From the IMG/VR virus record IMGVR_UViG_3300046323_000587, positions 1 through 64,000 of that record: 64,000 nt of DNA; one strand, given 5' to 3'. The notes beneath the pieces were generated by a model. That model had not been told where the DNA came from. It was given only the letters and a program-made list of their open reading frames with translations, and made no database searches. Position numbers and translations under genes: made by a program. This document shows, one piece after another, positions 5,144 through 43,361 of this stretch; position 1 is the first letter of the stretch, and each line of letters starts with the position of its first letter.

Positions 5144-5845
5144 ATGTTTTCTACAAAAATATATACAGAAATATCTTTGATTTCAAGTCAAACAGCAAAA
5201 TATTTGTATTCTAGTTATAATATTCCAGTAACTTATGAAGAAGATTGTCCGTATATTGTAATACTAGAAATAGATATAAAAACAAAAGAGTACAGATTTT
5301 TATCAAAAAAAGAAAATAATGGTAATTATTTAAGATACACCTTAAAACAAATTAAATTTCTATTAGAAACACCTAATATAGAAGTATGTTCTTCAATAGA
5401 AGCTCTAGCAGATATTTTCTTTAAATACGATAATAAATTATATAGTTTTAACTCTTATGACATACAAAGACAAAGAATGTCTAATAAATTATTACATTAT
5501 AGAGATAGAGCTAAACCTTTATGGAATTTATTTAATGAAGGCGAATATTATTTATTTGATTTCGTATTATCACCAGAAACTATCGAGAATCTTGTACTTG
5601 ATAACAGAACTAAATTAATCAATGAAAAGTATTCTTTATCTCAGCAATATAAATCAATAGCTATTCCTGATTACATTGTTTCTCAAAAGCAATATGATTT
5701 TGTAATTGATTTATACAATAAAAACGGCTGGATTATTCAATATATTGATATAATGAATAATAGTGAAAATTGTTATATATCAAGTAATTTTTTAGATAAG
5801 TATTGTTTAGTTAAAGGTACAGACAAAATAATTAAAATTAAATAA
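5144..5845 (+). CDS. partner of toxin-like gene 1 (putative immunity)
   Basis: 233 aa, no signal or TM, starts 12 nt after gene 1. Confidence 0.45.
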   Translation: MFSTKIYTEISLISSQTAKYLYSSYNIPVTYEEDCPYIVILEIDIKTKEYRFLSKKENNGNYLRYTLKQIKFLLETPNIEVCSSIEALADIFFKYDNKLYSFNSYDIQRQRMSNKLLHYRDRAKPLWNLFNEGEYYLFDFVLSPETIENLVLDNRTKLINEKYSLSQQYKSIAIPDYIVSQKQYDFVIDLYNKNGWIIQYIDIMNNSENCYISSNFLDKYCLVKGTDKIIKIK

Positions 5846-5871: not shown

Positions 5872-6825
5872 ATGTTAGATACAATAAAAAAAGCAAATTC
5901 AAATAAAGTAAAGTTAGGTTTCGATAATAAATTATATAAAGTAAGTTCTCTATTAATAGTTATAACTATTTTATTAGCTTTAATATATTCTTATTTTATT
6001 ATTAAATCTGAAATTCCAGTTACACCCAAATACGAAGAGCAATTACTTCACAAACTTCAAAGTAAAGACGGAAATCTATCAAAAGAAGAAGTTCAAGTGT
6101 TATTAAATACTTATGGAAAATACAAGATACTTCAGATGCTTTTCACACAAGAGTTTATCGAAGAAAGTTATACTTATGAAGAATTTTTATTAGATTACAA
6201 AGAATTAAAAGATAAACCTATATTTAAAATAGCTTTGTTGTATGAAAAAATTAATTTAAATAAAAGTAGTAATAAAATTATTTTAAATCAATTATACAAT
6301 GAAAATAAAAGAAGAATAAATAAATCAAAACAAAAAAAGGAGTTAATAATTATAACTACTTGTTTAAAATATGTTTTATACAAAGAAATAATAAAAAATT
6401 TTAGGTCTGAACACATTTTTTACATAAAAGATATAAAAATAACTTTAAGTTTATTAAACTTCTTTCATATTTGGATTGGTCACGGTATAGATTATAAAAA
6501 AGATTTTAATATAATTATAGAAGAGCAAACTCTTACAAAAGTACCTGAGTTTAATTACTCTTCTCACAATTTAATATTAGATTTAGATTTTTTATTTTCT
6601 AAAGTAAATAGTTTAGATTTAGATATAAATAACGATTTAAATAAACATAATAAACTATATTTTAAATTTTGTAATTTAGATTATGTTATATCTTTACATA
6701 AAAATAAAGAAAAAGATTTTAATATTACTACAATGTATATAGAAAGCAATGATTATTTAATCAAGAATTTTAATGCATTTATCAGTGTAAACCATCAAAC
6801 AATATATTTTTATGGAAAAAAATAA
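5872..6825 (+). CDS. TM-anchored HIxxxH protein 2 (putative RNase toxin, clade A)
   Basis: TM LLIVITILLALIYSYFII, NFFHIWIGH, NITTMYIE; close paralog of 8631-9614. Confidence 0.6.
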   Translation: MLDTIKKANSNKVKLGFDNKLYKVSSLLIVITILLALIYSYFIIKSEIPVTPKYEEQLLHKLQSKDGNLSKEEVQVLLNTYGKYKILQMLFTQEFIEESYTYEEFLLDYKELKDKPIFKIALLYEKINLNKSSNKIILNQLYNENKRRINKSKQKKELIIITTCLKYVLYKEIIKNFRSEHIFYIKDIKITLSLLNFFHIWIGHGIDYKKDFNIIIEEQTLTKVPEFNYSSHNLILDLDFLFSKVNSLDLDINNDLNKHNKLYFKFCNLDYVISLHKNKEKDFNITTMYIESNDYLIKNFNAFISVNHQTIYFYGKK

Positions 6826-7231
6826 TAATTTTTATTTCTATTTTAAAGATTTTTTAAATAGAAATAAAATTTTAAATCTTTTAAAAGAAGAGAAAGTATT
6901 ATTAGAAGAAGATGAAGTTATCACAAATTGTAAAATAGAGAGTCTTGTTTTTTCTTTTAACACCATTAAAGAAAATAATACAAAATTTGGTAATGATATA
7001 CTAATAGAACAAGAAAATACAATAATAAATGTTGTAAAAGTATTAAAAAATATAAAAAATTTTACATATTTTAAGGATAGAATTGACATTTATCAACTAC
7101 CCAATGTGTTAAAATTTATTTCCAAATTTATCCTTACTAGCAAAGAATTAATAATAATAAAAAATCTTGATACTGAAGAAGAGTATTTAATAACTGAAAC
7201 AACAATTATAAATTGCCATAAATATTTATAA
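6812..7231 (+). CDS. family A partner (putative immunity)
   Basis: Overlaps the toxin stop; C-terminal SKELIIIKNLDTEEEYLITETTIINC. Confidence 0.55.
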   Translation: MEKNNNFYFYFKDFLNRNKILNLLKEEKVLLEEDEVITNCKIESLVFSFNTIKENNTKFGNDILIEQENTIINVVKVLKNIKNFTYFKDRIDIYQLPNVLKFISKFILTSKELIIIKNLDTEEEYLITETTIINCHKYL

Positions 7232-7232
7232 A

Positions 7233-7670
7233 ATGATAGACTTAAAAAATAGTTCTTTTTATTTTTCTTTTGTAGATATTATAGATAGAAATAGAATATT
7301 AAACATAGTAAAAAAGAATAATATTTTTATTTACTCTGACTACTTAATATTAAATCGCAACATACCTTATTTAATTTATTCAAATAATTATATTTCAGAT
7401 AAAACTACATTTTACGATAAAAAATATTATGTATTTGAAAATGAGTCTACTTTTTTTAATACAATTAAAATAATAAAAACATTAAAATCTTTCACTTATT
7501 TACAAATACCTGACAATTTTTTTGAATGTTTTGATTTAAGTAGACTTTTAACTAAATTTGTTTTTAATAGCAAAGAATTGATAGTAATTAAAGATCTTGA
7601 CACGAATGCAGAATATATTGTAACAGAAAAAACAACTATAAATTGTACTAGTTTTTTTATAAAATGTTAG
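7233..7670 (+). CDS. family A partner (putative immunity)
   Basis: SKELIVIKDLDTNAEYIVTEKTTINC. Confidence 0.55.
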   Translation: MIDLKNSSFYFSFVDIIDRNRILNIVKKNNIFIYSDYLILNRNIPYLIYSNNYISDKTTFYDKKYYVFENESTFFNTIKIIKTLKSFTYLQIPDNFFECFDLSRLLTKFVFNSKELIVIKDLDTNAEYIVTEKTTINCTSFFIKC

Positions 7671-8119
7671 ACTTAAAAAATAACTATTTTTATTTTTGTA
7701 TAAGAGATATAGAAAAAAATCAAGAACTTATAGAAAAAATAATGCTTAGACATAATTACACAGAACATTGGTTTTCTATTAATACAGAAGTATTTAAGAT
7801 AAATAACAAAACTAAAACAATCTCTGGTAATGGAAGTTCAACTTACTGTAATTATATATTAATAGAAAATCCTGCTGTATTAGACAATATATTAGATGTT
7901 TTAAATAAAGTAAATACTTTTGAATATCTTAAAGAAACTTATCCAAGAGAAGAACGTTATATACATAATAGTTTAACTACAGTTAATATGTTAGCTAGGT
8001 TTTTAATTAATTCAAAAGAATTAATCATTATTAAAGACCTAAAAACATTGAATGAATACATAGTAACAGAAAATAGAGTAATAGATTGCAATAAATATTT
8101 AACCACATTATCTAATTAA
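7664..8119 (+). CDS. family A partner (putative immunity)
   Basis: SKELIIIKDLKTLNEYIVTENRVIDC. Confidence 0.55.
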   Translation: MLDLKNNYFYFCIRDIEKNQELIEKIMLRHNYTEHWFSINTEVFKINNKTKTISGNGSSTYCNYILIENPAVLDNILDVLNKVNTFEYLKETYPREERYIHNSLTTVNMLARFLINSKELIIIKDLKTLNEYIVTENRVIDCNKYLTTLSN

Positions 8120-8124
8120 ATAAA

Positions 8125-8607
8125 ATGATAGACTATCCCACAAACAATAAATTAAATTTTGTATTAAGCACTTCTATTGATTTAGAAGAATTAGTTAATT
8201 TATTTGAATTAAATAAAGTAAAAATTCATTATAGACTTAAACACAACACTATATACAGATTAGTATTACTGAAAGAAGAAATTATATTAGATGTACCTAA
8301 CAGTAATATTTATTATACTATTACCAATATTAACACTTTTGTAAATTACTTTTCTGCAATAAAAGATACTGATACAACAACACCTATGTATATTATGAAT
8401 GGTGATGACGGTACAGGTGATTCAGAAATAGGTAAATTTCATTTTGATAAAGAACCAGAAGAAGAGGATTTTCCACAAACAAAAGCTTATATTAGTAAGT
8501 TTCTTTATGATGCAGTAGAGTTAATTATATTATCTGATGAACGGTTTAATTGGACATTGATAACAGAAAAAAGCATTGAAAATATAACTCTTACAGATGT
8601 AGAATAA
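8125..8607 (+). CDS. divergent family A partner (putative immunity)
   Basis: SKFLYDAVELIILSDERFNWTLITEKSI aligns with the family A C-terminus. Confidence 0.5.
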   Translation: MIDYPTNNKLNFVLSTSIDLEELVNLFELNKVKIHYRLKHNTIYRLVLLKEEIILDVPNSNIYYTITNINTFVNYFSAIKDTDTTTPMYIMNGDDGTGDSEIGKFHFDKEPEEEDFPQTKAYISKFLYDAVELIILSDERFNWTLITEKSIENITLTDVE

Positions 8608-8630
8608 TTAAACATTTAAATTTTACAATT

Positions 8631-9614
8631 ATGATAAAAACAAAAGAAAAAGTTGATAAGGTTGATAAGAAGAACAATTATAACCTAGGTTTTGATAACA
8701 AATTCTATAAAGCAAGTTCATTAGTAATAATTATTTCGATTTTATTAACAATAGTTTTTTCTATTTACCCAATAAAATCTGAAATTCCAATTACGCCTAG
8801 TTATGAAGAACAATTATTACAAAAATTACAGACTAAAGAGGGAAATTTATCAAAAGAAGAAGTTGAAATATTGTTGAATATTTATGGAAAATATAAAATT
8901 CTTCAAATGTTGTTTACTCAAGAGTTTATTGAGGAAGAATATACTTATGAAGAATTTTTATTAGATTACAAAGAGTTGAAAGATAAATTAATTTTTAAAA
9001 TTGCTTTGTTATATGATGAAAAAAATTTAATTGGCAAAAATGCTGTAACTAAAAACAAAGTTATTTTAAATATATTGGGTTCAGATAATAAAGCTAAATT
9101 AGAATATACAAAAGCAATTTATAAAGATTCTTTAAAAGCTGTATTAAATTGTTTAAAATATGTTGTTTATGGAGAAATTAGAAAAAAGTATGAACCTTTA
9201 TATATTTTTAAACTAAAAGATATAGAAATAAAATTTTATATAACCTATTTATACCATATTTGGACAGGACATTGTATAGACTATCAAAAAGATTTTAATA
9301 TTATGTTGAATAAAACAAATATTGTAGATACATTTTCAGAATTTAGAAGAATTAATATATTTTTAGATATTGGTTTTTACGTTCAAAAATTAAATGACTT
9401 GGATTTAGATTATAAGAAGATTTTAACTAACAATGAAAATTTATATTTTAAATTAGGAGAAGTTATATATTGTTTAAGAATTATTGTAAAAAACAATGAA
9501 TATATAATAGAAACTTATTATCCAAAGAATGAAATAGATCTTTCAAGTAAAAAAACAATTATTGAAATTAAACTTAACTATAAAACATATTTTTATTATG
9601 AACACAAAAAATAA
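8631..9614 (+). CDS. TM-anchored HIxxxH protein 3 (putative RNase toxin, clade A)
   Basis: TM SLVIIISILLTIVFSIYP, YLYHIWTGH, IIETYYPK (EndoU-like terminal strand). Confidence 0.6.
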   Translation: MIKTKEKVDKVDKKNNYNLGFDNKFYKASSLVIIISILLTIVFSIYPIKSEIPITPSYEEQLLQKLQTKEGNLSKEEVEILLNIYGKYKILQMLFTQEFIEEEYTYEEFLLDYKELKDKLIFKIALLYDEKNLIGKNAVTKNKVILNILGSDNKAKLEYTKAIYKDSLKAVLNCLKYVVYGEIRKKYEPLYIFKLKDIEIKFYITYLYHIWTGHCIDYQKDFNIMLNKTNIVDTFSEFRRINIFLDIGFYVQKLNDLDLDYKKILTNNENLYFKLGEVIYCLRIIVKNNEYIIETYYPKNEIDLSSKKTIIEIKLNYKTYFYYEHKK

Positions 9615-10044
9615 ATTTTATTTTTACATATACGATACAAAAGAAGACAAAACTCAAGTTGAAAATCTTTGTGTAAAGTATAATTTTATTTGTGACAATA
9701 CTCATCCTTGGTTTTCTGGAGATACAGAATTATATATTATTGATACAATAGAAAAAAATGTTTGGGGAGATAACATTTGTAGTTATGCTAATCGTATTAG
9801 TATAGAAGATATCAATTTTTTAGAAAACATTTTTATTGTATTGAGTAGTTTAACTCAGTTTGAATACTCTAAGAACACTTTTCACAGAGACGAAGATTAT
9901 CGTTACATAAATGGAAAAAAACTTTTAACTACTAGAGAAATGTTAGCTCAGTTTTTATTTAAAAGTAAAGAATTAGTTATTATAAAAGATTTAATAACAA
10001 AAAAAGAGTATTTAATAACAGAGAATAAAATAATTAAATGCTAA
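9598..10044 (+). CDS. family A partner (putative immunity)
   Basis: ATG at 9598 overlaps the toxin end (track start 9562 is TTG); SKELVIIKDLITKKEYLITENKIIKC. Confidence 0.55.
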   Translation: MNTKNKFYFYIYDTKEDKTQVENLCVKYNFICDNTHPWFSGDTELYIIDTIEKNVWGDNICSYANRISIEDINFLENIFIVLSSLTQFEYSKNTFHRDEDYRYINGKKLLTTREMLAQFLFKSKELVIIKDLITKKEYLITENKIIKC

Positions 10045-10048
10045 ATTA

Positions 10049-10495
10049 ATGAAAGATTACAATATACTTTCTTTTATAATATCCTATGAAATAAATAGAG
10101 AAAAATTACTAGCTTTATTAAAACAATCTAATGCAAATCTTCAAAATTTTTTTAACTTCGATGAACAGGAGCCTGGATATGTAATATACAATAATAAAAC
10201 TAATACTTTTTATAGTGATTTTAGTTATATTGTTACAAATACAATTAAAATAGAAAATGAAAATCTATTATTAAATGTATTGAAAGTATTAAAAACTCTA
10301 AATACATTTAATTATTTTATAGAAACAACTAGAATTTTAGAATTGCCTGATAAAAGTAAATTTATTTCTAGTCTTTTATTTAAAAGTAAACATTTAATCA
10401 TTATTAAAGATTTAGAAAATAATAAAGAATATTTAATAACAGAAGACAATATTGTTGATTGTAATGATTTTTTGTCTAAAAAAGTTTTAAACTAA
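10049..10495 (+). CDS. family A partner (putative immunity)
   Basis: SKHLIIIKDLENNKEYLITEDNIVDC. Confidence 0.55.
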   Translation: MKDYNILSFIISYEINREKLLALLKQSNANLQNFFNFDEQEPGYVIYNNKTNTFYSDFSYIVTNTIKIENENLLLNVLKVLKTLNTFNYFIETTRILELPDKSKFISSLLFKSKHLIIIKDLENNKEYLITEDNIVDCNDFLSKKVLN

Positions 10496-10497
10496 TT

Positions 10498-10956
10498 ATG
10501 GGTACAAAAAATAAATTTTATTTTTATATAGATTATAGAAAAGAAACAGAGGTTACTGAAATATGTAAAAAATATAAATTTTCTTATGACTATGATCCTC
10601 TTTGGTTTTCTTGTAATACAGAAATATATACTATTGATACAGAAAAAAAATACGTTTGGGGAGATACTGTTTATAATTACAATACTTCCATTGCGATAGA
10701 TAATCTAAATCTACTAGAAAATGTTTTTATTGTATTAAGCAATTTAATTGAATTTGAATACTCTAAAACTACTTTTCAAAGAGATGAAAAAGATTATAGT
10801 TATTTTAAAAATTCAACAACAAAAGAATTGATACCAAGAATCTTATTTAAAGATAAATATTTAATAATAATCAAGAATTTAATTACATTAGAGGAGTATC
10901 TAATTACTGAAAACAGAATTATAAATTGTATCGAATATTTAACTCAAAATAAATAA
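10498..10956 (+). CDS. family A partner (putative immunity)
   Basis: DKYLIIIKNLITLEEYLITENRIINC; close paralog of 9598-10044. Confidence 0.55.
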   Translation: MGTKNKFYFYIDYRKETEVTEICKKYKFSYDYDPLWFSCNTEIYTIDTEKKYVWGDTVYNYNTSIAIDNLNLLENVFIVLSNLIEFEYSKTTFQRDEKDYSYFKNSTTKELIPRILFKDKYLIIIKNLITLEEYLITENRIINCIEYLTQNK

Positions 10957-27909: not shown

Positions 27910-28671
27910 ATGGATTTAAAAGATATAAAAAAAGTAAATTTAGAGCACAATATGTATATTTTAAGATGTTATGGATTAAATGGACAAACTTTAGTAAAAG
28001 TTGGATATTCTTCTAAAATTAGAAATAGGCTTTGTACATATAATCGTGCAAACCCTTTAATTGAATTTGTAACAAGTTTTTATGCAAACTTAGGACAAAA
28101 GTTTGAATTAATTTTACATTCTTCATTTCCAGGTTATAAAACAAATAAGGAATGGTATGAAGAAAAATATTTAGATTTAATATTGAATTTTATTGATAAA
28201 CATAACAATACAACAGATATTAAAAAACTATTAAAAGAAGCTGGAAAAATAAAAATAATCAAAGAATCTCCAAAACAATATGCTATGTATGTTAAAGAAA
28301 TAAGAAATTGTAATGATTTAAAAGAAAAACTAGAAGTGTTGGAAACTATTGATACTCAAACTTGGAAAAAGTATTTACAGTATGGAATTGAAACAAATAA
28401 TTTACAACTAAATATAACAGCAGCTAAAAAGCATTACGAAACTAAATTTAGTTATAATATACTTAAAGAAGTTATTTATGATAATTTCAAATTAAATACA
28501 TTTTATGTTGCAACAGAAATTAAAGAAATTTTAAATAAAATCTATAAAAATATGAAATTAAATAAATCTCCAAAATCAACTGATTTATATGAATTTTTTG
28601 AGATGAAAGTTACTCAGAAAATGAAAGAAGGTAAAAATTTAAAAGGATTTACATTAACTTTAAAAAAGTAA
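27910..28671 (+). CDS. T5orf172/GIY-YIG-like nuclease fused to a helicase-type C-terminal domain
   Basis: MYIL..VKVGYSSKIRNRLCTY..ELILH..NKEWY; C-terminus similar to that of 22262-23971. Confidence 0.65.
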   Translation: MDLKDIKKVNLEHNMYILRCYGLNGQTLVKVGYSSKIRNRLCTYNRANPLIEFVTSFYANLGQKFELILHSSFPGYKTNKEWYEEKYLDLILNFIDKHNNTTDIKKLLKEAGKIKIIKESPKQYAMYVKEIRNCNDLKEKLEVLETIDTQTWKKYLQYGIETNNLQLNITAAKKHYETKFSYNILKEVIYDNFKLNTFYVATEIKEILNKIYKNMKLNKSPKSTDLYEFFEMKVTQKMKEGKNLKGFTLTLKK

Positions 28672-28690
28672 ATAATAAATAATTTAAAAT

Positions 28691-29329
28691 ATGTATCTAC
28701 ACGAAAAAGTTAAATATCCAAGTACACCTCACTTAAATATAAGTCAAACAATAAATAATGACGATAAAATCATTAAAGACTATTCTCAACTTGAAGGCAA
28801 AGAAGTAGTAATTCTTATTAAAATGGACGGTGAAAATACAAGTTTTACTAATTCTTATATACACGCAAGAAGTCTTGATTCTAGTCATCATTCAAGTAGG
28901 AATTGGGTAAAAGGATTATGGGGTAATATTAAACATACAATACCTGATAATATTAGAATTTGTGGTGAAAATATGTTTGCTGTACATAGTTTAGAGTATT
29001 CAGACTTACTTAGTTATTTTTATGTATTCAATATATGGAAAGATAACTATACTTGTCTTAGTTATGATGATGCTATAAATACTTGTAAAGAATTAGGTTT
29101 ACTTCACGTACCAGAAGTATATAGAGGAACTTTTGATTTAAATAAGATAAAGGAGGTATATAATTCTTTAGATAAAATTAAACACGAAGGTATAGTGGTT
29201 AGAAATACTAATTCTTTTATGTTTCAAGATTTTAAATATAATGTTTGTAAAGTAGTAAGACCTAATCACGTGCAAACTGATGAAGATTGGTTAAATAACC
29301 CTATAATTAAAAATAGATTAAAACAGTGA
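28691..29329 (+). CDS. RNA ligase
   Basis: KYPSTPHL, KMDGENT (motif I), HARS, CGENMFAVHS, EGIVVR. Confidence 0.9.
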   Translation: MYLHEKVKYPSTPHLNISQTINNDDKIIKDYSQLEGKEVVILIKMDGENTSFTNSYIHARSLDSSHHSSRNWVKGLWGNIKHTIPDNIRICGENMFAVHSLEYSDLLSYFYVFNIWKDNYTCLSYDDAINTCKELGLLHVPEVYRGTFDLNKIKEVYNSLDKIKHEGIVVRNTNSFMFQDFKYNVCKVVRPNHVQTDEDWLNNPIIKNRLKQ

Positions 29330-29746: not shown

Positions 29747-30610
29747 ATGTTTATAACTGAACAAGACATTCTTCGATTTGATTATTTATTAGAAAATACA
29801 AAATTCATATTAAGAAAATCACTAACAAACAAATTCAATATTAAAAATTTTTTATCAAAAACACAATACATTAATCACATCAGTTCATCTTTACTTGATA
29901 TTAATTTTATATCAAGTAAATTTCTTCATACAATTAAACTTTGTGAAAAAGATCAATCTAAAATTGTATATTATGTGTTTAAATATTTGACTATTATTGA
30001 TTTTTATTATAAAGAAAAAGAATATTATAAATCAATAGGCAATAATCCAATTACATTAAATATTCCATTAAAAAATTCTAATTATTGTAGCAAAGAATAC
30101 CAAAATTTAGATGAATTTTTTTATTTAGATTTTAAAAAAATATTAAAAAATAAGGAATTATTAAATTCATTTGATACAGATGTATTTAATAATATTAATA
30201 AATATAAAATTAATAAAACTAGGCTCACTCTTGTTAGAATTAAACAATTTATTGAAAATATAAAATATATTATTACTTATAAATTTATTAAAGAAGTTTA
30301 TTTAAAAAAAGAAATCTAGTATTATAATTCTATTAAAAAAGATACTAAATTAAAATTAAACTTTTATTTAGGTTGTTATGAACAAGAACAATATTTTACA
30401 AAATATTTCAATTCTAAATCAGATTGTGTAAGATTTATTGATAAAATAATAAACAAAGAAGTTGTTATAAATGGCTTAGACCCTAGTTTAGTTCAGATAA
30501 TACATTTTGTACACAATATCAATTACACTTTAACAGAAAAACAAGAGTTTTATAAAAATCGTTATAGAGAAATCTTTTTTTATTGTACTAATGAAGAGAA
30601 CTCAAATTAA
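29747..30610 (+). pseudogene. gene split by in-frame TAG; 3' part is a paralog of 20449/20912
   Basis: After TAG 30317 the frame continues YYNSIKKDTKLKLNFYL..TKYFNSKSDC..INGLDP to TAA 30608. Confidence 0.7.
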
Positions 30611-30852
30611 TATTTCAAATTATTATTTCAAAGATTATTACTTAATTTAACTTAAATTCATAGTAAAATGAAACCAAAAACAATTCTCAAACAATTAACA
30701 TTACTATTATTGGTAATAATAATCATTTTTATTGGCAATATAATAACTACTTTTCTTATTATATACACCAGAGACCCTATAATTACTTTTCAAAGAGCTA
30801 TAAATTTAACTTTAATAGTGGTCAATAAAATATTAGGATTAGAATAGAATTT

Positions 30853-30891
30853 AAGCTTAAACTATTCTTATGAATAATTTAAGCTTTTTTT
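30853..30891 (+). terminator. intrinsic terminator
   Basis: AAGCTTAAA.TATTC/GAATA.TTTAAGCTT plus T run. Confidence 0.7.
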
Positions 30892-30939
30892 ATTGTCATT
30901 AATAACAAATTAATTTAAATAATTAAAAAATTTAAAATT

Positions 30940-31413
30940 ATGAATTGGTTAGAAGATAGAAAATTATCAGCACCTATTTTAGAAGAAAATGTGCATTACT
31001 ATAGAAATTTAATTCCTTCATTTCAAGATTTAACTATATATGAAGAGCAAACTCAATATGCTTGGAAAAAAGATTATGGAGATATTGAATTTCTTAAAAA
31101 TTATTTTAAAGGAATGTTTACAGAAGAAGAATTTTTTGAAAAATGTCAAGATTGTTATAATAAAGAATTTAGGCTATACTTAGATTTAGATAAAAAATGT
31201 TTTACTTATAGAGATAGTGCAATTGATCATTATAATTTTGTTGAGTATACTACACCAAATAAAACAATAGAAGAGTTAATTAAAATGTACGAAGAAACAA
31301 AAGAATTAATAATATTTAATCCTGTATATAGTAGACATTTGTTTCAAGAAACTGATATTTTATCAGCTTATAATAAACCTTTTATAATAAAAAAATTTAA
31401 TATTTATTTTTAA
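30940..31413 (+). CDS. hypothetical protein
   Basis: 157-aa ORF. Confidence 0.7.
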   Translation: MNWLEDRKLSAPILEENVHYYRNLIPSFQDLTIYEEQTQYAWKKDYGDIEFLKNYFKGMFTEEEFFEKCQDCYNKEFRLYLDLDKKCFTYRDSAIDHYNFVEYTTPNKTIEELIKMYEETKELIIFNPVYSRHLFQETDILSAYNKPFIIKKFNIYF

Positions 31414-31432
31414 TCCTTAAATTAACTATATA

Positions 31433-32407
31433 ATGTTTAAACTTAATCATTTCCCAGAAAGTAAATTAAAATTTGATAAAAAGAATAGGAATAATAACAC
31501 TAAGTACAATAAAATAAAATATTTATTAATTGGTACAGTTATTTTACTAAGCTCTATTGGTATTTATTTTTCTATTTTAGAAACACCTTCAAAAGAAAAA
31601 CAATTACTTCAGAAATATATTAATAAAGAACCTCTTACTATCAATGAAAAACTGGAATTGTGTACGTGGCTTGATGGTAATGAAAGTTACAAAAAAGAGT
31701 TTGAAGAAATTTGTGGCGATAAAGCTGAAAGACCTGAATATACCAAAGTAAAAAAATATGTTGAAGATAATTCAGGAGGAGATTCTAAATTACAAAAAGA
31801 TTCTGTTGTTTTAGCTTTTAAAGAAAATTTAAAAGATATTCTAGCAAGTAGAACACCTTATCAAAAAGAATACATATATTTAACTGCCTATAATTATTAT
31901 AAACATTTAAAAAAACTATATCCAGATCAAATACTTTATAGAGATACTAAAAATGGTTATAGAGTTTATTTTAGCTTAGAAAGATTCTTTCATATTGTAA
32001 TTAAACACGATTTATATAAAAAGAAATTTGATTTCACCAATAGAAAAAATATTAGTCAGTTTAAAGACGGTGATTTTATTAGAACAGAACAACACGTTTT
32101 TGAAGATGTTTATAGAATATTTGATCATATTAATCAAAATAATGAAAGTAAATTTCTAGAACGTAAAGTACCAAATTCTGAAATACAAAATAATGAATTA
32201 TATTATCAGTATTTAAATAACAACAAAATTTTACAAAATTATGTGTTAAATTATAAAATAAAGAATAAGATTATTTATGTTCAAACATACTACGAAATAG
32301 AAGATTCGGTTATTAACAATGCAATAAATAGATATAAATTAATTAAAGAAATTTTAGATTCTACACAAATTTCAAATAAACATTTTATCTATAGACTAGA
32401 TAAATAA
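31433..32407 (+). CDS. TM-anchored HIxxxH protein 5 (putative RNase toxin, clade C)
   Basis: MFKLN start, TM YLLIGTVILLSSIGIYFSIL, CX16C, RFFHIVIKH, YVQTYYEI. Confidence 0.6.
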   Translation: MFKLNHFPESKLKFDKKNRNNNTKYNKIKYLLIGTVILLSSIGIYFSILETPSKEKQLLQKYINKEPLTINEKLELCTWLDGNESYKKEFEEICGDKAERPEYTKVKKYVEDNSGGDSKLQKDSVVLAFKENLKDILASRTPYQKEYIYLTAYNYYKHLKKLYPDQILYRDTKNGYRVYFSLERFFHIVIKHDLYKKKFDFTNRKNISQFKDGDFIRTEQHVFEDVYRIFDHINQNNESKFLERKVPNSEIQNNELYYQYLNNNKILQNYVLNYKIKNKIIYVQTYYEIEDSVINNAINRYKLIKEILDSTQISNKHFIYRLDK

Positions 32408-32437
32408 GTCATTAAATGTAAAACAATTTAATAAATT

Positions 32438-32929
32438 ATGGATATTTTAGAAAAAATAAAAGAAAAACATAATACTTGTGTAAATATATTAGAAATAGAT
32501 CCAAACAATCTTTTAGATTTACCAGAAGAGTATAGAAATTTTAGTAATTGTAAAGGCGTGGAAGACTCTTACGAAGCTTTAGATTATGCTAGTAGAATTG
32601 GTTATATTACAATAGTAGATTTGGAAAAAAATGAAATTTATATTGACAATGCATTAAAAAAATTCCCTAATTGTATAGATGTTGGATTTGAAAATACCTT
32701 ATTTTTAAAACATTTTTTAGATGAGTTTAATAAAACAAAATCTGTATTTTATTTTAAACATTGTCCAAAAGAAAGTCATTGGAGATACACTCTTATAATA
32801 GCGACATTTGATGAAGGAATATCTTGGAAATTATACCCTTATGAATCAACGTTATCAGAAATAGAAAAATACATTTCTGGAAAACAAATTATTAAAACAG
32901 TTTACGATCTTAAAGATATTATTAATTAA
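32438..32929 (+). CDS. family C partner (putative immunity)
   Basis: YRNFSNC..TIVDLEKNEI..LIIATFDEGISWKLYP. Confidence 0.55.
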   Translation: MDILEKIKEKHNTCVNILEIDPNNLLDLPEEYRNFSNCKGVEDSYEALDYASRIGYITIVDLEKNEIYIDNALKKFPNCIDVGFENTLFLKHFLDEFNKTKSVFYFKHCPKESHWRYTLIIATFDEGISWKLYPYESTLSEIEKYISGKQIIKTVYDLKDIIN

Positions 32930-32942
32930 AAATCAATCAGAT

Positions 32943-33041
32943 ATGTTTAAAATAAATACAGTTCCAAATAAAGTAAGACATTTTAGTTCTGAAATTAAAT
33001 GAAACTTCACATTAAACTATTTTATCTATATAAAACCATAA
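32943..33041 (+). pseudogene. internally deleted toxin-like gene (N- and C-termini joined)
   Basis: MFKINTVPNK..*NFTLNYFIYIKP*; 33851-34807 starts MFKINQEP and ends NYFIYIKP*. Confidence 0.8.
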
Positions 33042-33046
33042 AAAAT

Positions 33047-33821
33047 ATGAACAATTTATATTACACAAATAAAATTACTATAAAATCTGAATCTCTTTTA
33101 TATATATATATCAAAAATAAATAAAAAATTTTTAAACCTTGAAAATATAGAAGATATTAAAACAGACATAGTTGAATTAGATTTAATCAAAAAAACAATT
33201 AAAAATATTGATTCTAATGAAAATTTTGAAGATTTGATAGAATTTAAATCTAGTTTAGAATTTGATAAATTTTTAAATGAATTTAGAAAAACTAATTATG
33301 TAGCAATTCTAAAAGATTCAACATTTAAAGATTGCTTTAAAGATGTAAATAAAATTATCTGCACTTTTAATGAAAAAGATTAGATCAGTTTTGAGAGTAA
33401 AAAAGAAACAATTTATACGAAAAGAGAACATAAAATTTATATTAATAAACTATATCTAACTGGTCAACAAGTATTATTATTTGACTATAAATATAAAAAC
33501 TTTTCTAATTACCAAGATATAAAACAATTAAATATAGATTTATATCATTTTTATATGAATGATTGCGGAAATGTTACAATAAATTTAGAAACAAATGAAT
33601 TAATAATTCATTCAGAAACAGACGAAATAAATCCAAGAATAGATTTTTTGAGATTTAATCAAATAGGTGATATTTATGAAATCATTGATAACTATAAAAA
33701 ATTTGGTTATGTAATTGTATCACATAATTTTTTATCTGAATATACTTATAAAGATGGATTTAATATACTGTGTTCATTTGATAACGGCAATTTACATTGG
33801 AATAAATATTCTGCAAGCTAA
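33047..33821 (+). pseudogene. broken two-domain family C partner
   Basis: Early stop/frameshift; IICTFNEKD*ISF has TAG 33381 at the family's conserved Trp; frame continues to ILCSFDNGNLHWNKY. Confidence 0.7.
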
Positions 33822-33850: not shown

Positions 33851-34807
33851 ATGTTTAAAATAAATCAAGAACCAGTAATAAAGAGAGAAAACTCTTCTAA
33901 TAAATTATTAAATAATAAACACTTAATATTCATTGGAATAATTTTAATCTCTATTGGAGTTTCTCAATGTTTAGGTTTAGTAGAATTTCATTCAAAAGAA
34001 AAGGAGTTATTACAACGTTATAAGAACAAGGAACCTTTAACTGAATTAGAGAAATTTGAATTATGTGAATGGTTAAGTGAAAATAAAAGTTATGAAAAGG
34101 AGTTTAAAGAGATTTGTGAGAGTAAGTTAGATACTACTGTAAAAGGTGGGGCAGAGTATGATAAAGAATTTATTCAGTTTATAAATAAAAATAATAAATA
34201 TCTTCTTACAAACAAAGAAATAAAGAAATTATATAAAAATCTAAGTCCTATGGTAAAAAAAAGAAATAAGTATGAAAGATCTTTTGTTTATAAAACAAGT
34301 CTTGATCTATGGTTTCAATTAAATAAAGAGGTTCCTAACGGGTTTATTTATTCTACTATGAGTAATGATTATAAAATTAAAATATCTATTGATGATTTTT
34401 TACATATTGTATTAAGACATCAAGTATTTGAAAATTATTTAAATTTTACATTAAATAAAAAAGAAACTCAATTTGAAACAGAAGACCAAAAATTTTATTT
34501 AAAAGATGTTTTATGGAGTATAGAAACTATTTTTAGATCTCTGACACCTCAGAGTTTATATAGGTTTGTAAGTAGGTTAAATATAAATTCTAGGCCTACA
34601 ACTTATCAACTAATTATTTGTTATCTTAACACAACCAAAGAAGAAGAATTTTATAACATACATTTTAGTATACAAACAGATACTCTTTATATTAAAACTT
34701 TTCATAGAAATAAAAACTATACAGAAAAAATCTTACTAGATTCAGGAAATATTAAAGAACAACTAAGTAAATTTCAACCTAACTACTTTATTTATATTAA
34801 ACCGTAA
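33851..34807 (+). CDS. TM-anchored HIxxxH protein 6 (putative RNase toxin, clade C)
   Basis: TM LIFIGIILISIGVSQCLGLV, CX16C, DFLHIVLRH, YIKTFHRN. Confidence 0.6.
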   Translation: MFKINQEPVIKRENSSNKLLNNKHLIFIGIILISIGVSQCLGLVEFHSKEKELLQRYKNKEPLTELEKFELCEWLSENKSYEKEFKEICESKLDTTVKGGAEYDKEFIQFINKNNKYLLTNKEIKKLYKNLSPMVKKRNKYERSFVYKTSLDLWFQLNKEVPNGFIYSTMSNDYKIKISIDDFLHIVLRHQVFENYLNFTLNKKETQFETEDQKFYLKDVLWSIETIFRSLTPQSLYRFVSRLNINSRPTTYQLIICYLNTTKEEEFYNIHFSIQTDTLYIKTFHRNKNYTEKILLDSGNIKEQLSKFQPNYFIYIKP

Positions 34808-34816
34808 AAAAATATT

Positions 34817-35215
34817 ATGCTAAATAAAAAAATACCTTTTATAGAAAATAAATTATTTGTCATAACAGAACAAATAAATCAACTTTCAGACAAGTATAAA
34901 AATTTTAATAATTTTAGTTCTGTTAAAGATGCTAATACTTATCTAAATTATTTAGAAATGGATGGAGAATTTGTTATAGTAGATTTTAATAAAAATATAT
35001 TATATAATGAAAGAGAAATTTTAGAAGAAAATTATTATAATTATTGTGAATTTTTTAGATTATCTGATTTAAAAGAAATATTTGATTTATTTAATTTACA
35101 TAAATCTGTTTTTTTTATAAAAACTGATTGGAGTTGTGATGTTTTAGGATGCTGTAGATTAATATGTCGATTTGGAGATAACGTATGGAAAAGTTACCCT
35201 ATTAATGTAATTTAA
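34817..35215 (+). CDS. family C partner (putative immunity)
   Basis: YKNFNNF..VIVDFNKNI..LICRFGDNVWKSYP. Confidence 0.55.
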   Translation: MLNKKIPFIENKLFVITEQINQLSDKYKNFNNFSSVKDANTYLNYLEMDGEFVIVDFNKNILYNEREILEENYYNYCEFFRLSDLKEIFDLFNLHKSVFFIKTDWSCDVLGCCRLICRFGDNVWKSYPINVI

Positions 35216-35238
35216 CTTTTAATTTATAAACAAATATT

Positions 35239-35634
35239 ATGTTAGATATTCCTTACACAGTAAATAAATTATATTTATCATCTGATATGATGAATATGTT
35301 AAAAGTAGAGAATTACAAAGAATTTAAAAACTTTAATTCTTTAAAAGAAGTTCATCAATTTATTACCTATCTTAGTAAAACACCTGATTATGCTATATTT
35401 GAATTAGATACTGGTAAAATCTATGAAAGCAGATTAGGTACATTTGAAGAAAAATATAAGACTGGTTATAGATTTCTTAAACTTGAAGATTACAATGCTT
35501 TTATGGAAATGTATAATCAGTATAAAGATGTTACTATTTTAGATATAGATTGGCTTTATGAAGTTATAGGATTTTATAGATTAATTTGTTGTTTTGGTGA
35601 AGATACTTGGGTAGGTTACAATATAATGAAGTAG
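35239..35634 (+). CDS. family C partner (putative immunity)
   Basis: YKEFKNF..AIFELDTGKI..LICCFGEDTWVGY. Confidence 0.55.
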   Translation: MLDIPYTVNKLYLSSDMMNMLKVENYKEFKNFNSLKEVHQFITYLSKTPDYAIFELDTGKIYESRLGTFEEKYKTGYRFLKLEDYNAFMEMYNQYKDVTILDIDWLYEVIGFYRLICCFGEDTWVGYNIMK

Positions 35635-42404: not shown

Positions 42405-43361
42405 TTGAAAACAGATAATTTACATAAAGCCAAAAAAGTAAAAAATGACGAATTTTATACTTTTTATGAAGACATTGAAAAAGAATTACAACATTATAAA
42501 GAAGAATTAAAGAATAAAATTATTTATTGTAATTGTGATGATTATAAAATATCTAATTTTTATAACTATTTTCTTAATAATTTCAAAGAATTAGAGATCG
42601 CTAAACTGATTACAACTCATTATAACAATAATAATTCAATTGCTTATAAAACAGAAACCACATTTGAAAATGATGAAGTCGTTATAACAATACAGGCATT
42701 AAAAGAAGACGGAGATTTTGCTAGTCAAGAATGTGTTGATATATTAATCAATTCAGATGTTATTGTTACTAATCCACCTTTTAGTTTATTTAATAAATAC
42801 ATTTCTTTATTAGAAGACCACAATAAAAAATATCTTGTAGTTGGTAATTTTGGAGCTGTTTCTTATAAAAAGATATTTAAGTTAATAAAGTCAAATAATC
42901 TTTATATAGGAGTAAATAAAATTAAAACTTTTCTTCAACCTGATAATACAATTAAAAAATTTGGAAATATTTGTTGGTTTACTAACATTAAAAATAAAAC
43001 AAACGATTTTATTAAATTGACTAAACTTTATAGTCCAACAAATTATATAAAATATGAAAATTTTGATGCTATTGACGTTGATAAACTAAAAAATATTCCA
43101 AAAGATTTTACAGGTGTTCTTGGAGTCCCTATTACTATTTTAGAACAATTTAATTCTTTACAATTTACTATTATAGGTTTAGGTAGTGGAAAATCTTTAC
43201 AAGAAATTGCTCCTAATTGTACCTACCCTAAACAATTTTTAATTGATTATTTTAATTCAGGTAAGAAAGGACATTTATCAGAAGGTATGTTTGGTTTAGC
43301 TTTATATAAGAATGGAATACCTATTGCACCTTATAGTAGAATATTAATCAAAATAAATTAA
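42405..43361 (+). CDS. adenine-specific DNA methyltransferase, EcoRI-methylase type
   Basis: AKKVKNDEFYT, IYCNCDD, GDFASQEC, VTNPPFSLF, GVPIT. Confidence 0.85.
   Translation: MKTDNLHKAKKVKNDEFYTFYEDIEKELQHYKEELKNKIIYCNCDDYKISNFYNYFLNNFKELEIAKLITTHYNNNNSIAYKTETTFENDEVVITIQALKEDGDFASQECVDILINSDVIVTNPPFSLFNKYISLLEDHNKKYLVVGNFGAVSYKKIFKLIKSNNLYIGVNKIKTFLQPDNTIKKFGNICWFTNIKNKTNDFIKLTKLYSPTNYIKYENFDAIDVDKLKNIPKDFTGVLGVPITILEQFNSLQFTIIGLGSGKSLQEIAPNCTYPKQFLIDYFNSGKKGHLSEGMFGLALYKNGIPIAPYSRILIKIN

What the first reader, a model, noticed from the sequence alone, without database searches (positions are those of the whole stretch)
32943..33821. Deletion scar of a ninth toxin gene with an orphaned, decaying immunity gene
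Seen: 99 nt read MFKINTVPNKVRHFSSEIK*NFTLNYFIYIKP*. The neighbouring intact toxin 33851 starts MFKINQEP and ends NYFIYIKP*, with a similar TAAAAA(A)ATA(TTA)TG junction to the next gene. About 850-900 nt, including the TM and HIxxxH, are missing. The following two-domain family C gene carries a frameshift and a TAG at the family's conserved Trp. Inference: this is cassette turnover caught in progress. The toxin was lost first and the partner then decayed, which is the order expected if the partner exists to neutralise the toxin.
Basis: partly seen in the sequence, partly recalled or inferred. Interest (0 to 1): 0.75.

Follow-up and report, generated by a model that had tools for sequence, protein, structure and literature searches.

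The report
Deleted nuclease gene, decaying partner gene
In a 226-kb freshwater crAss-like phage, one of nine copies of a membrane-anchored, RNase-like gene has shrunk to a 99-base head-to-tail stub and its neighbouring partner gene is freshly broken; this is ordinary gene-family turnover, but in a gene family nobody has described.

Summary
Bases 32943-33041 keep the first 12 or more codons and the last 8 codons plus stop of a gene family ("T") that has eight intact copies of 300-340 aa, all in this window. About 0.9 kb is missing, including the membrane anchor and the HIxxxH motif. In the six-frame translation of the whole 226-kb genome, MF[KR][IL]N and YFIYIKP occur only at T-gene ends and in this stub.

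The join is not an assembly error. A second JGI sample and a Logan contig from a third run carry it letter for letter.

The next gene (33047-33821) is a disabled family-C gene with two C-like domains. It has a frame change at about 33100-33122 and a TAG exactly where four other C domains have an invariant Trp.

The genome is a jumbo crAss-like phage that uses the standard code, so the stops are real.

"Toxin" is partly supported. No Pfam or PHROG family matches. Models of the C-terminal domain repeatedly, though weakly, match BECR-fold RNase toxins (CdiA-CT, EndoU, PBECR, colicin D, RelE), with a fitting His and Thr/Ser pattern.

"Immunity" rests only on gene order and co-variation. The complex prediction gave no answer. 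The proposed order of events (toxin lost first) cannot be tested, and no relative with an intact copy was found.

The parts
32943..33041 (+). Head-to-tail remnant (99 nt) of a ninth T-family gene. About 0.9 kb of interior is missing.
32943..32978 (+). Retained head (MFKINTVPNKVR). 25 of 36 nt are identical to the starts of 33851 and 36741, and the first 15 nt are identical to 33851.
33000..33002 (+). In-frame TGA between head and tail. It is a real stop under the genome's standard code.
33015..33041 (+). Retained tail (NYFIYIKP plus TAA). 23 of 27 nt are identical to the end of 33851, and all four differences are synonymous.
33047..33124 (+). 5' end of the disabled C-family gene. The ATG follows the usual A-rich spacer, 25 codons are C-like at the N-terminus, then TAA.
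33100..33122 (+). Stretch in which the reading frame changes. It holds (AT)6 at 33100-33111 and A-runs. The 33111 T/A polymorphism and several contig ends lie here.
33084..33380 (+). C-like domain 1 in the +1 frame, matching profile positions 51-124 at E = 1e-4.
33381..33383 (+). TAG at the position of the family's invariant Trp. It is also present in contigs L009 and L011.
33384..33821 (+). C-like domain 2, complete (profile positions 5-129, E = 6e-10) and still open. No ATG, GTG or TTG start lies before 33555.
33851..34807 (+). Nearest intact T paralogue (318 aa): N-terminal membrane helix, helical domain, and a BECR-like domain with HIxxxH.
34817..35634 (+). Two intact tandem C genes (34817-35215 and 35239-35634) that follow 33851.
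31433..32929 (+). Upstream cassette of the same subfamily: T gene 31433-32407 and C gene 32438-32929.

Best explanation
**What it is.** The window is the early-gene arm of a 226-kb crAss-like phage from fresh water. This arm carries an array of cassettes. Each cassette has one T gene followed by one to four small soluble partner genes, and the partner family changes with the T subfamily.

**The T protein.** It has an N-terminal membrane helix, a helical domain, and a C-terminal BECR-fold (PBECR/EndoU/CdiA-CT-like) domain. That domain has an invariant HIxxxH in its first helix and an invariant Thr/Ser in a late strand.

**The scar.** At 32943-33041 one such T gene, closest to 33851-34807, lost about 0.9 kb of its interior in one or more deletions. 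Only 12 or more head codons and 8 tail codons remain, in one frame and now interrupted by TGA.

**The partner.** The partner gene(s) of that cassette (33047-33821, two family-C domains) then or meanwhile lost function through a frame change near an (AT)6/A-run and a nonsense change at the conserved Trp. Both frames are otherwise still open, so the decay is recent, at roughly 0.02 substitutions per site.

**Shown:** the homology of the stub and of the broken gene, the reality of the join in several assemblies, the standard code, and the BECR-like fold at weak scores.

**Inferred:** that T is an RNase toxin or effector, that C neutralises it, and that relaxed selection on C followed the loss of T.

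**Confidence.** The overall figure of 0.7 blends about 0.9 for the scar and the broken partner gene, about 0.6 for the BECR RNase assignment, and about 0.4 for C being a cognate inhibitor.
For: **Family and motifs**
- Eight intact paralogues, all within the window.
- HIxxxH is invariant in 16 sequences, including outside relatives.

**Head and tail homology and its rarity:**

**Broken C gene:**

**Standard code**
- 91% of the genome is covered by ORFs of 100 aa or more under table 11.
- TGA and TAG end 47 of 223 long ORFs.
- No credible tRNA gene is found, so no suppressor tRNA.

**Phage identity:** portal, large terminase and ribonucleotide reductase (RNR) are present, and the terminase is closest to crAss-like phages at 30-33% identity.

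**Independent support for the join**
- JGI 3300046328 contig L013 covers window 30370-33237 with one SNP and one 24-nt indel, both outside the stub.
- A Logan contig of run X3 covers 32957-33601 with no difference.
- The TAG is present in L009 and L011.

**Fold**
- The domain model has pLDDT 76.
- The VIA-align list is dominated by BECR toxins: CdiA-CT 7m5f at Z 5.1, then BrnT, RelE, colicin D, ParE, HigB, YoeB and Nsp15.
- AFDB cluster hits include bacterial EndoU (probability 1.0, TM 0.57-0.61) and PBECR3/4.
- Atlas leads are EndoU, RNAse_A_bac, PBECR3 and DUF4258.
- A His in the first helix plus a C-terminal Thr/Ser is the active-site pattern described for PBECR and colicin D (PMC5512222). 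Extra strands before that helix are described for PBECR and CDI toxins (bioRxiv 10.64898/2026.08.28.747851).

**Partner families co-vary with T subfamilies:**

**Recent decay:** 134 stop-creating single changes are available in 245 codons, and only one has happened.
Against: - No Pfam, PHROG or PDB sequence match for T or C.
- Foldseek against the PDB found nothing.
- All fold scores lie in the range the tool itself calls common (Z 5.1 or less; E 1e-3 to 3e-2).
- The complex prediction of T33851 with C34817 scored 0.01, which is no answer.
- No relative with an intact copy at the same place was found, so the ancestral state is inferred from paralogues only.
- The charge pattern around the membrane helix and a conserved Cys pair suggest the catalytic domain may face outwards. 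That does not fit a simple intracellular toxin-antitoxin picture.
- T4229 belongs to the same subfamily, but its neighbour is not recognisably family C.
- In run X2, contig depth drops from 24 to about 4.7 upstream of 33442. This hints at another, unseen haplotype.
Confidence: 0.7

Rival explanations
1. This is neutral loss of a redundant cassette with no toxin-immunity logic. T and C are ordinary early phage genes, for example host-takeover or anti-defence RNases with helper proteins. One of nine redundant cassettes is decaying, and the deletion and the point lesions came in no meaningful order.
For: - Eight other copies remain.
- There is no evidence of binding.
- PBECR domains in phages have been proposed to act on host or phage RNAs rather than as self-poisoning toxins (PMC5512222).
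- All lesions co-occur in every haplotype seen.
Against: - T is tightly followed by small genes, with spacers of 5-31 nt or overlaps, at every copy. The partner families switch with the T subfamily. This is the hallmark of cognate pairs.
- Outside relatives P0010 and P0011 also have an overlapping downstream gene.
Confidence: 0.3
2. The stub is an empty cassette site. The conserved head and tail sequences would serve as recombination handles through which T interiors are swapped in and out among co-infecting phages, and the 99-nt form would be the unoccupied state.
For: - Head and tail are joined in frame.
- Run X2 shows a drop in depth upstream of 33442, and several assemblies break at 33094-33102.
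- Two haplotypes differ by a 24-nt indel in the neighbouring spacer.
Against: - Heads and tails are not conserved at the DNA level across the eight intact genes.
- No occupied allele was found in any sample or database.
- The contig breaks are explained by the 33111 SNP and the 32419 indel between two haplotypes, both of which carry the stub.
Confidence: 0.05
3. The broken frames are still expressed by recoding, that is by frameshifting at the A/T-rich run, by TAG or TGA read-through, or by an alternative genetic code of the kind known in some crAss-like phages.
For: - Stop-codon reassignment occurs in some crAss-like lineages (my own knowledge).
- The frame change lies in a slippery (AT)6/A-run.
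- Both frames stay open over long stretches.
Against: - Table 11 already gives 91% coding.
- Reading TGA or TAG as sense adds little.
- No credible tRNA gene, so no suppressor tRNA, is found in 226 kb.
- TAG as Trp is not a known reassignment.
- The T stub would still lack its entire functional interior.
Confidence: 0.03
4. The join is a misassembly, a chimeric join of two T-gene ends.
For: Paralogous families can mislead assemblers. Several contigs end at 33094-33102.
Against: - Paralogues share only 17-28% protein identity, so there are no long shared words.
- The same join is present in a separate JGI assembly (L013) and in a Logan contig of run X3.
Confidence: 0.02

Closest known systems
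PBECR / colicin-like BECR-fold RNase domains of phages and polymorphic toxins (Pfam PBECR1-5, EndoU_bacteria; CdiA-CT toxins, colicin D)
   Same: - The predicted core has a helix followed by five strands, with two extra strands before the helix.
- There is an invariant His in that helix and an invariant Thr/Ser in a late strand.
- The genes are phage-borne.
- Each is followed by small, fast-evolving genes (PMC5512222).
   Different: - No sequence-profile match to any Pfam BECR family.
- A second invariant His gives HIxxxH.
- The domain is fused to an N-terminal membrane helix and a helical domain with a Cys pair, rather than to MuF, portal, CdiA or Rhs carriers.
- It is present in nine copies in one phage.
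Orphan toxin-immunity modules and orphan immunity genes of CDI, Rhs and T6SS loci
   Same: - Arrays of diversified toxin and small cognate gene cassettes.
- Truncated toxin remnants that keep only short conserved ends.
- Immunity genes that outlive their toxin.
   Different: - Here the array lies in the early region of a lytic-type crAss-like phage.
- There is no delivery apparatus.
- Each T is a complete gene with its own start.
- The surviving partner is itself decaying rather than being retained.
Type II toxin-antitoxin pairs of the RelE/ParE (BECR) superfamily
   Same: BECR-like fold (RelE, ParE, HigB and YoeB are among the structural hits) and a two-gene unit.
   Different: - The gene order is large protein first.
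- The partner has no recognisable DNA-binding domain.
- T is about 320 aa and membrane-anchored.
- The catalytic pattern is colicin-like rather than RelE-like.

Membership tests
T-family remnant (deletion-derived pseudogene) | Homology to both ends of intact family members, in the right order, orientation and frame | tested here: met
   The head and tail peptide motifs are unique to T-gene ends in 226 kb.
T-family remnant (deletion-derived pseudogene) | Absence of the interior (membrane helix, helical domain, HIxxxH domain) | tested here: met
   The stub is 99 nt against 903-1023 nt in the intact genes. The T profile finds nothing else there.
T-family remnant (deletion-derived pseudogene) | The join is real in the DNA and not an assembly product | tested here: met
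   L013 from a second JGI sample and a Logan contig of run X3 cover it exactly. Only contigs, not raw reads, were available.
T-family remnant (deletion-derived pseudogene) | An intact orthologue at the same place in a related genome | tested here: inconclusive
   Only near-identical population variants, all with the scar, and one distant relative without this cassette were found.
Family C (partner genes 32438, 34817, 35239) | Profile match over the domain, including the invariant N, Y, F and W positions | tested here: met
   Domain 2 gives E = 6e-10 and keeps the Trp. Domain 1 gives E = 1e-4 and has TAG at the Trp position.
BECR-fold RNases (PBECR/EndoU/colicin-like) | [quoted passage not shown] | tested here: met
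   The AF2 domain model has pLDDT 76 and pTM 0.74. The top VIA-align hits are almost all BECR toxins, but Z is 5.1 or less. AFDB hits include EndoU and PBECR.
BECR-fold RNases (PBECR/EndoU/colicin-like) | Active-site His in the first helix and a Thr/Ser (or His) in a C-terminal strand | tested here: met
   H185 and H190 are invariant in helix 180-192. Thr/Ser is invariant in the I-x-[TS]-[FY]-[FY] strand in 16 of 16 sequences. The criterion comes from PMC5512222.
BECR-fold RNases (PBECR/EndoU/colicin-like) | Sequence-profile membership in a curated family (PF18812 and others, PF14436) | tested here: not met
   No Pfam hit for any of the 16 members, even at E up to 5. No PDB sequence hit.
BECR-fold RNases (PBECR/EndoU/colicin-like) | Metal-independent endoribonuclease activity | not testable with these tools
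   Needs an enzyme assay.
Toxin-immunity pair (polymorphic-toxin type) | A small gene directly downstream whose family co-varies with the toxin subfamily | tested here: met
   The exception is T4229, whose neighbour is not recognisably family C.
Toxin-immunity pair (polymorphic-toxin type) | Specific binding and neutralisation of the toxin by the partner | tested here: inconclusive
   Complex prediction scored 0.01, with the verdict 'no answer'.
Toxin-immunity pair (polymorphic-toxin type) | A trafficking or delivery module (CdiA, Rhs, T6SS, colicin translocation domains) | tested here: not met
   Only an N-terminal membrane helix and a helical domain are present. There are no Pfam hits.

The most novel reading that the evidence does not exclude
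A lytic-type jumbo crAss-like phage carries its own polymorphic toxin system. This would be nine diversified, membrane-anchored and possibly outward-facing BECR RNases, each with cognate cytoplasmic immunity genes. They would be used against co-infecting phages (superinfection exclusion) or against neighbouring cells. The scar with its freshly decaying partner would be a snapshot of cassette turnover in which the immunity gene loses its purpose once its toxin is gone.
Probability: 0.25. Interest if true: 0.75.

Novelty: new variant of a known kind. Interest (0 to 1): 0.45.

Why it matters
On its own, the scar is an ordinary pseudogene. It matters because it marks active birth-and-death turnover in a multi-copy family that no database describes. 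The family has eight intact copies plus this remnant in one phage and only about nine remote relatives among 1.8 billion representative proteins.

If the T proteins are RNase effectors and the small neighbours are their cognate inhibitors, this would be a phage-borne counterpart of bacterial polymorphic toxin arrays. It would give a simple set of natural toxin-inhibitor pairs to test for specificity. The paired loss of T and decay of C would then be natural evidence that C has no role apart from T.

Tried and rejected
1. **Alternative genetic codes.** Tables 4 and 15 barely extend ORFs, and table 11 gives 91% coding. Rejected; all stops were read as stops or as X.
2. **Pfam and PHROGs for T, C and neighbours.** Nothing usable.
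3. **PDB by sequence profile and by Foldseek.** Nothing.
4. **Word-seeded protein searches** with T33851, with pseudo-C domain 2 and with the C alignment. Only the window's own proteins came back.
5. **The search for related loci.** T33851 found nothing in the metagenome or viral contigs.
6. **RNA-ligase neighbours in 37 viral contigs.** None carries T or C.
7. **Test of 5144-5845 as an intact two-domain C gene.** No relation found.
8. **Complex prediction of T33851 with C34817.** No answer.
9. **Atlas search for C34817.** The model was poor and gave no lead.
10. **Read laying.** It returned only Logan contigs, not raw reads, and left some out. For example, it did not list L019, which exists in run X1. 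Depth holes upstream of 33095 were therefore not interpreted.
11. **(TA)n length variation as the cause of contig breaks.** Rejected. The difference between haplotypes there is a T/A substitution at 33111.

Full report
**1. What the window is.**
- The window is the first 64 kb of a single 226,480-base contig. The contig is JGI freshwater metagenome 3300046323, contig Ga0456308_0000001.
- GC content is 20-30%.
- Genes run on the + strand for the first 100 kb and on the - strand for the next 110 kb.
- ARAGORN reports only one doubtful call and no credible tRNA. No Rfam family is found in the window.
- PHROG profiles identify a portal, a large terminase and a ribonucleotide reductase.
- The terminase is closest, at 30-33% identity, to crAss-like phages of Bacteroides, to uncultured gut phages, and to Flavobacterium and Cellulophaga phages.
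- It is therefore a jumbo crAss-like phage, and the window is its early-gene arm.
- The standard code applies. Table 11 ORFs of 100 aa or more cover 91% of the genome. 176 end in TAA, 27 in TAG and 20 in TGA. Reading TGA or TAG as sense adds little. I read every internal stop as a stop, or as X in searches.

**2. The gene family.**
- An iterated profile search of all ORFs finds eight paralogues of 300-340 aa. All are in the window: 4229, 5872, 8631, 16529, 31433, 33851, 36741 and 54860.
- They share only 17-28% identity. Invariant positions are a Glu and the motif H-I-x-x-x-H.
- Each has one N-terminal hydrophobic helix with a positively charged N-flank. Six of the eight have a conserved Cys pair about 30 and 45 residues behind the helix.

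**3. The stub.**
- Bases 32943-33041 read MFKINTVPNKVRHFSSEIK-stop-NFTLNYFIYIKP-stop.
- Head: 15 of 15 nt are identical to the start of 33851. 25 of 36 nt match both 33851 and 36741.
- Tail: 23 of 27 nt match the end of 33851, and all four differences are synonymous. The same A-rich spacer then leads to the next ATG.
- Each half taken alone is only moderately unusual at the DNA level. Scores were reached by 73 and 6 of 5000 shuffles, and by 5 and 1 of 378 real gene ends.
- The peptide motifs are decisive. MF[KR][IL]N occurs three times and YFIYIKP twice in all six frames of 226 kb, always at T-gene ends or in the stub.
- The middle 36 nt cannot be assigned, so the deletion endpoints are known only to within about 12 codons.
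- Roughly 860-920 nt are missing, including the membrane helix, the helical domain and nearly all of the HIxxxH domain.
- The synonymous-only divergence of the tail suggests the gene was kept under selection long after it diverged from 33851, and was cut down later.

**4. The gene behind it.**
- An ATG at 33047 sits behind the usual spacer. It opens 25 codons with a C-like N-terminus, ending at TAA 33122-33124.
- The +1 frame is open over 33084-33380. It meets TAG at 33381-33383 and is open again over 33384-33818.
- A profile of the three intact C genes (32438, 34817, 35239) matches twice. Domain 1 matches profile positions 51-124 (E = 1e-4) and stops at the TAG. Domain 2 matches positions 5-129 (E = 6e-10).
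- In the alignment the Trp is invariant in the three intact genes and in domain 2. By spacing from the conserved Phe, the TAG of domain 1 occupies that same position.
- No ATG, GTG or TTG precedes domain 2. It was therefore either fused to domain 1 or has lost its start.
- No intact two-domain C gene exists in the genome. The 233-aa neighbour of T4229 is unrelated at the profile level. "Two-domain gene" is therefore one of two readings, and the other is a former tandem pair like 34817 and 35239.
- The two pseudo-domains are no closer to 34817 or 35239 than to 32438. This cassette is an old one, not a recent copy of its neighbour.
- 245 codons offer 134 stop-creating single changes, yet only one nonsense change has occurred. 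The loss of constraint is therefore recent, at roughly 0.02 substitutions per site with wide limits.

**5. Is the join real?**
- A 2,892-base contig from a second JGI sample (3300046328, L013) covers window 30370-33237. Its only differences are a T/A change at 33111 and a 24-nt insertion after 32418. The stub and the frame-0 stop are identical.
- A Logan contig of a third run (X3) covers 32957-33601 without any difference.
- Contigs L009 and L011 carry the TAG.
- The contig ends at 33094-33102 and at 32423 are explained by two co-existing haplotypes that differ at 33111 and 32419. Both haplotypes carry the scar.
- Only contigs were available, not raw reads, and read laying omits some records.
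- One point stays open. In run X2 the contigs covering 33094-33450 have depth about 4.7, against 24 downstream of 33442. This may mean a further haplotype that I could not recover.

**6. What the T proteins are.**
- No Pfam, PHROG or PDB sequence match exists.
- An exhaustive profile search of 1.84 billion representatives finds only nine outside relatives.
  - Two of them sit together on a 23-kb contig of a distantly related phage that shares at least nine other early genes with this one.
  - Two more sit on short contigs, each with an overlapping downstream gene.
  - One, without the membrane helix, lies in a bacterial chromosome.
- AlphaFold models of the full protein (pLDDT 69) and of the C-terminal domain alone (pLDDT 76, pTM 0.74) agree on the domain layout. 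It has two short strands, a helix carrying HIxxxH, then five strands.
- Foldseek against the PDB finds nothing.
- VIA-align against 48,161 chains gives only 115 hits with Z of 2 or more. The top of the list is almost entirely BECR-fold toxins:
  - CdiA-CT of Serratia (Z 5.1) and five other CdiA-CTs;
  - BrnT, RelE, colicin D and ParE;
  - HigB, YafQ, YoeB, MqsR and Nsp15 EndoU.
- AlphaFold DB clusters give bacterial EndoU nuclease (probability 1.0, TM 0.57-0.61) and several PBECR3, PBECR4 and MuF-C entries.
- The language-model search independently lists EndoU_bacteria, RNAse_A_bac, PBECR3 and DUF4258.
- Every score is weak by the tools' own notes, but the agreement is striking.
- The conserved residues fit. 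A His in the first helix plus a Thr/Ser in a late strand (I-x-[TS]-[FY]-[FY], 16 of 16 sequences) is the configuration described for PBECR and colicin D (PMC5512222). Extra strands before that helix are described for PBECR and CDI toxins (bioRxiv 10.64898/2026.08.28.747851).
- I conclude, with moderate confidence, that T carries a colicin-like BECR RNase domain. It works like such a domain on present evidence, but it is not a member of any curated family.

**7. Are the small genes immunity genes?**
- Each T is followed within 5-31 nt, or with overlap, by one to four small soluble proteins.
- All-against-all clustering shows that partner families switch with the T subfamily. Genes 5872 and 8631 have three paralogous partners each. 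Genes 16529, 36741 and 54860 each have their own partner sets. Genes 31433 and 33851, and the stub, are followed by family C.
- This is the pattern of cognate pairs, but nothing more could be shown. The complex prediction gave no answer, C has no relatives or usable model, and T4229's neighbour is not family C.
- The predicted N-in/C-out topology and the Cys pair suggest the RNase domain may be exported. That would fit a colicin/CDI-type logic, with an exported toxin and a cytoplasmic inhibitor, or a superinfection-exclusion role, better than an intracellular toxin-antitoxin pair. This is inference only.

**8. Order of events.** All haplotypes seen carry the deletion, the frame change and the TAG together. 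No intermediate exists in the data, so "toxin first, partner second" remains an expectation drawn from the toxin-immunity model. It cannot be used as evidence for that model.

**9. Verdict.**
- The reading as a deletion scar with a freshly decaying partner is well supported.
- The functional labels are plausible for T and unproven for C.
- The event is ordinary gene-family turnover. The family and its nine-cassette array in a crAss-like jumbo phage appear to be undescribed.

Noticed in passing
window 1-64000 and the whole contig (226,480 bases): The genome is a jumbo crAss-like phage from fresh water. It has two opposed gene arms, no credible tRNA gene, and three giant ORFs of 2,342-3,833 aa on the - strand (104614-138593 in contig coordinates).
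   Followed up: partly
window 32418/32419 and 33111: Two co-existing haplotypes. One has a 24-nt insertion in the spacer between 31433-32407 and 32438-32929, plus A instead of T at 33111. It is seen in JGI 3300046328 (L013) and in run X1 (L019). This explains the contig breaks at 32423 and 33094-33102.
   Followed up: yes
window 33094-33450 against 33442 onward, run X2: Logan contig depth is about 4.7 upstream and 24 downstream of 33442. Most genomes in that sample may carry a different sequence upstream. I could not recover it.
   Followed up: partly
window, 30 nt upstream of + strand starts: TTAAAT occurs within 30 nt upstream of 40 of 129 gene starts in the first 100 kb, against about 9% expected. 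It lies before 6 of the 8 T genes, typically at -14 to -18. It may be an early promoter or an initiation element.
   Followed up: partly
window 5872-10956: Two neighbouring cassettes each consist of a T gene followed by three paralogous partners: 6812, 7233 and 7664 after 5872, and 9562, 10049 and 10498 after 8631. This looks like a duplicated four-gene unit.
   Followed up: partly
all eight T proteins, for example residues 26-44, 72 and 89 of 33851-34807: A single N-terminal membrane helix with a positively charged N-flank, plus a conserved Cys pair behind it in six of the eight copies. The Cys pair is also present in outside relatives. This suggests an outward-facing, disulfide-bonded domain.
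   Followed up: partly
L016/L017 (Logan SRR19629880 contig 1332, 23 kb): A distantly related phage fragment shares at least nine early genes with this phage. These include the gene upstream of T54860. It carries two T-family copies of its own (P0007, P0008).
   Followed up: partly
window 27910-29329 and 42405-43361: A T5orf172/MUG113-like gene and an RNA ligase lie just upstream of the cassette block, and an EcoRI-type methyltransferase lies downstream. An RNA ligase next to predicted RNases may matter for RNA repair.
   Followed up: no
L058 5001-5906 (JGI 3300003757, 125-kb contig): A T-like protein without the membrane helix (P0013) lies in a bacterial chromosomal context. An 87-aa gene on the opposite strand overlaps its end.
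   Followed up: no
contig 213761-213830: ARAGORN reports one odd tRNA-like call with an undetermined anticodon. It was not examined.
   Followed up: no
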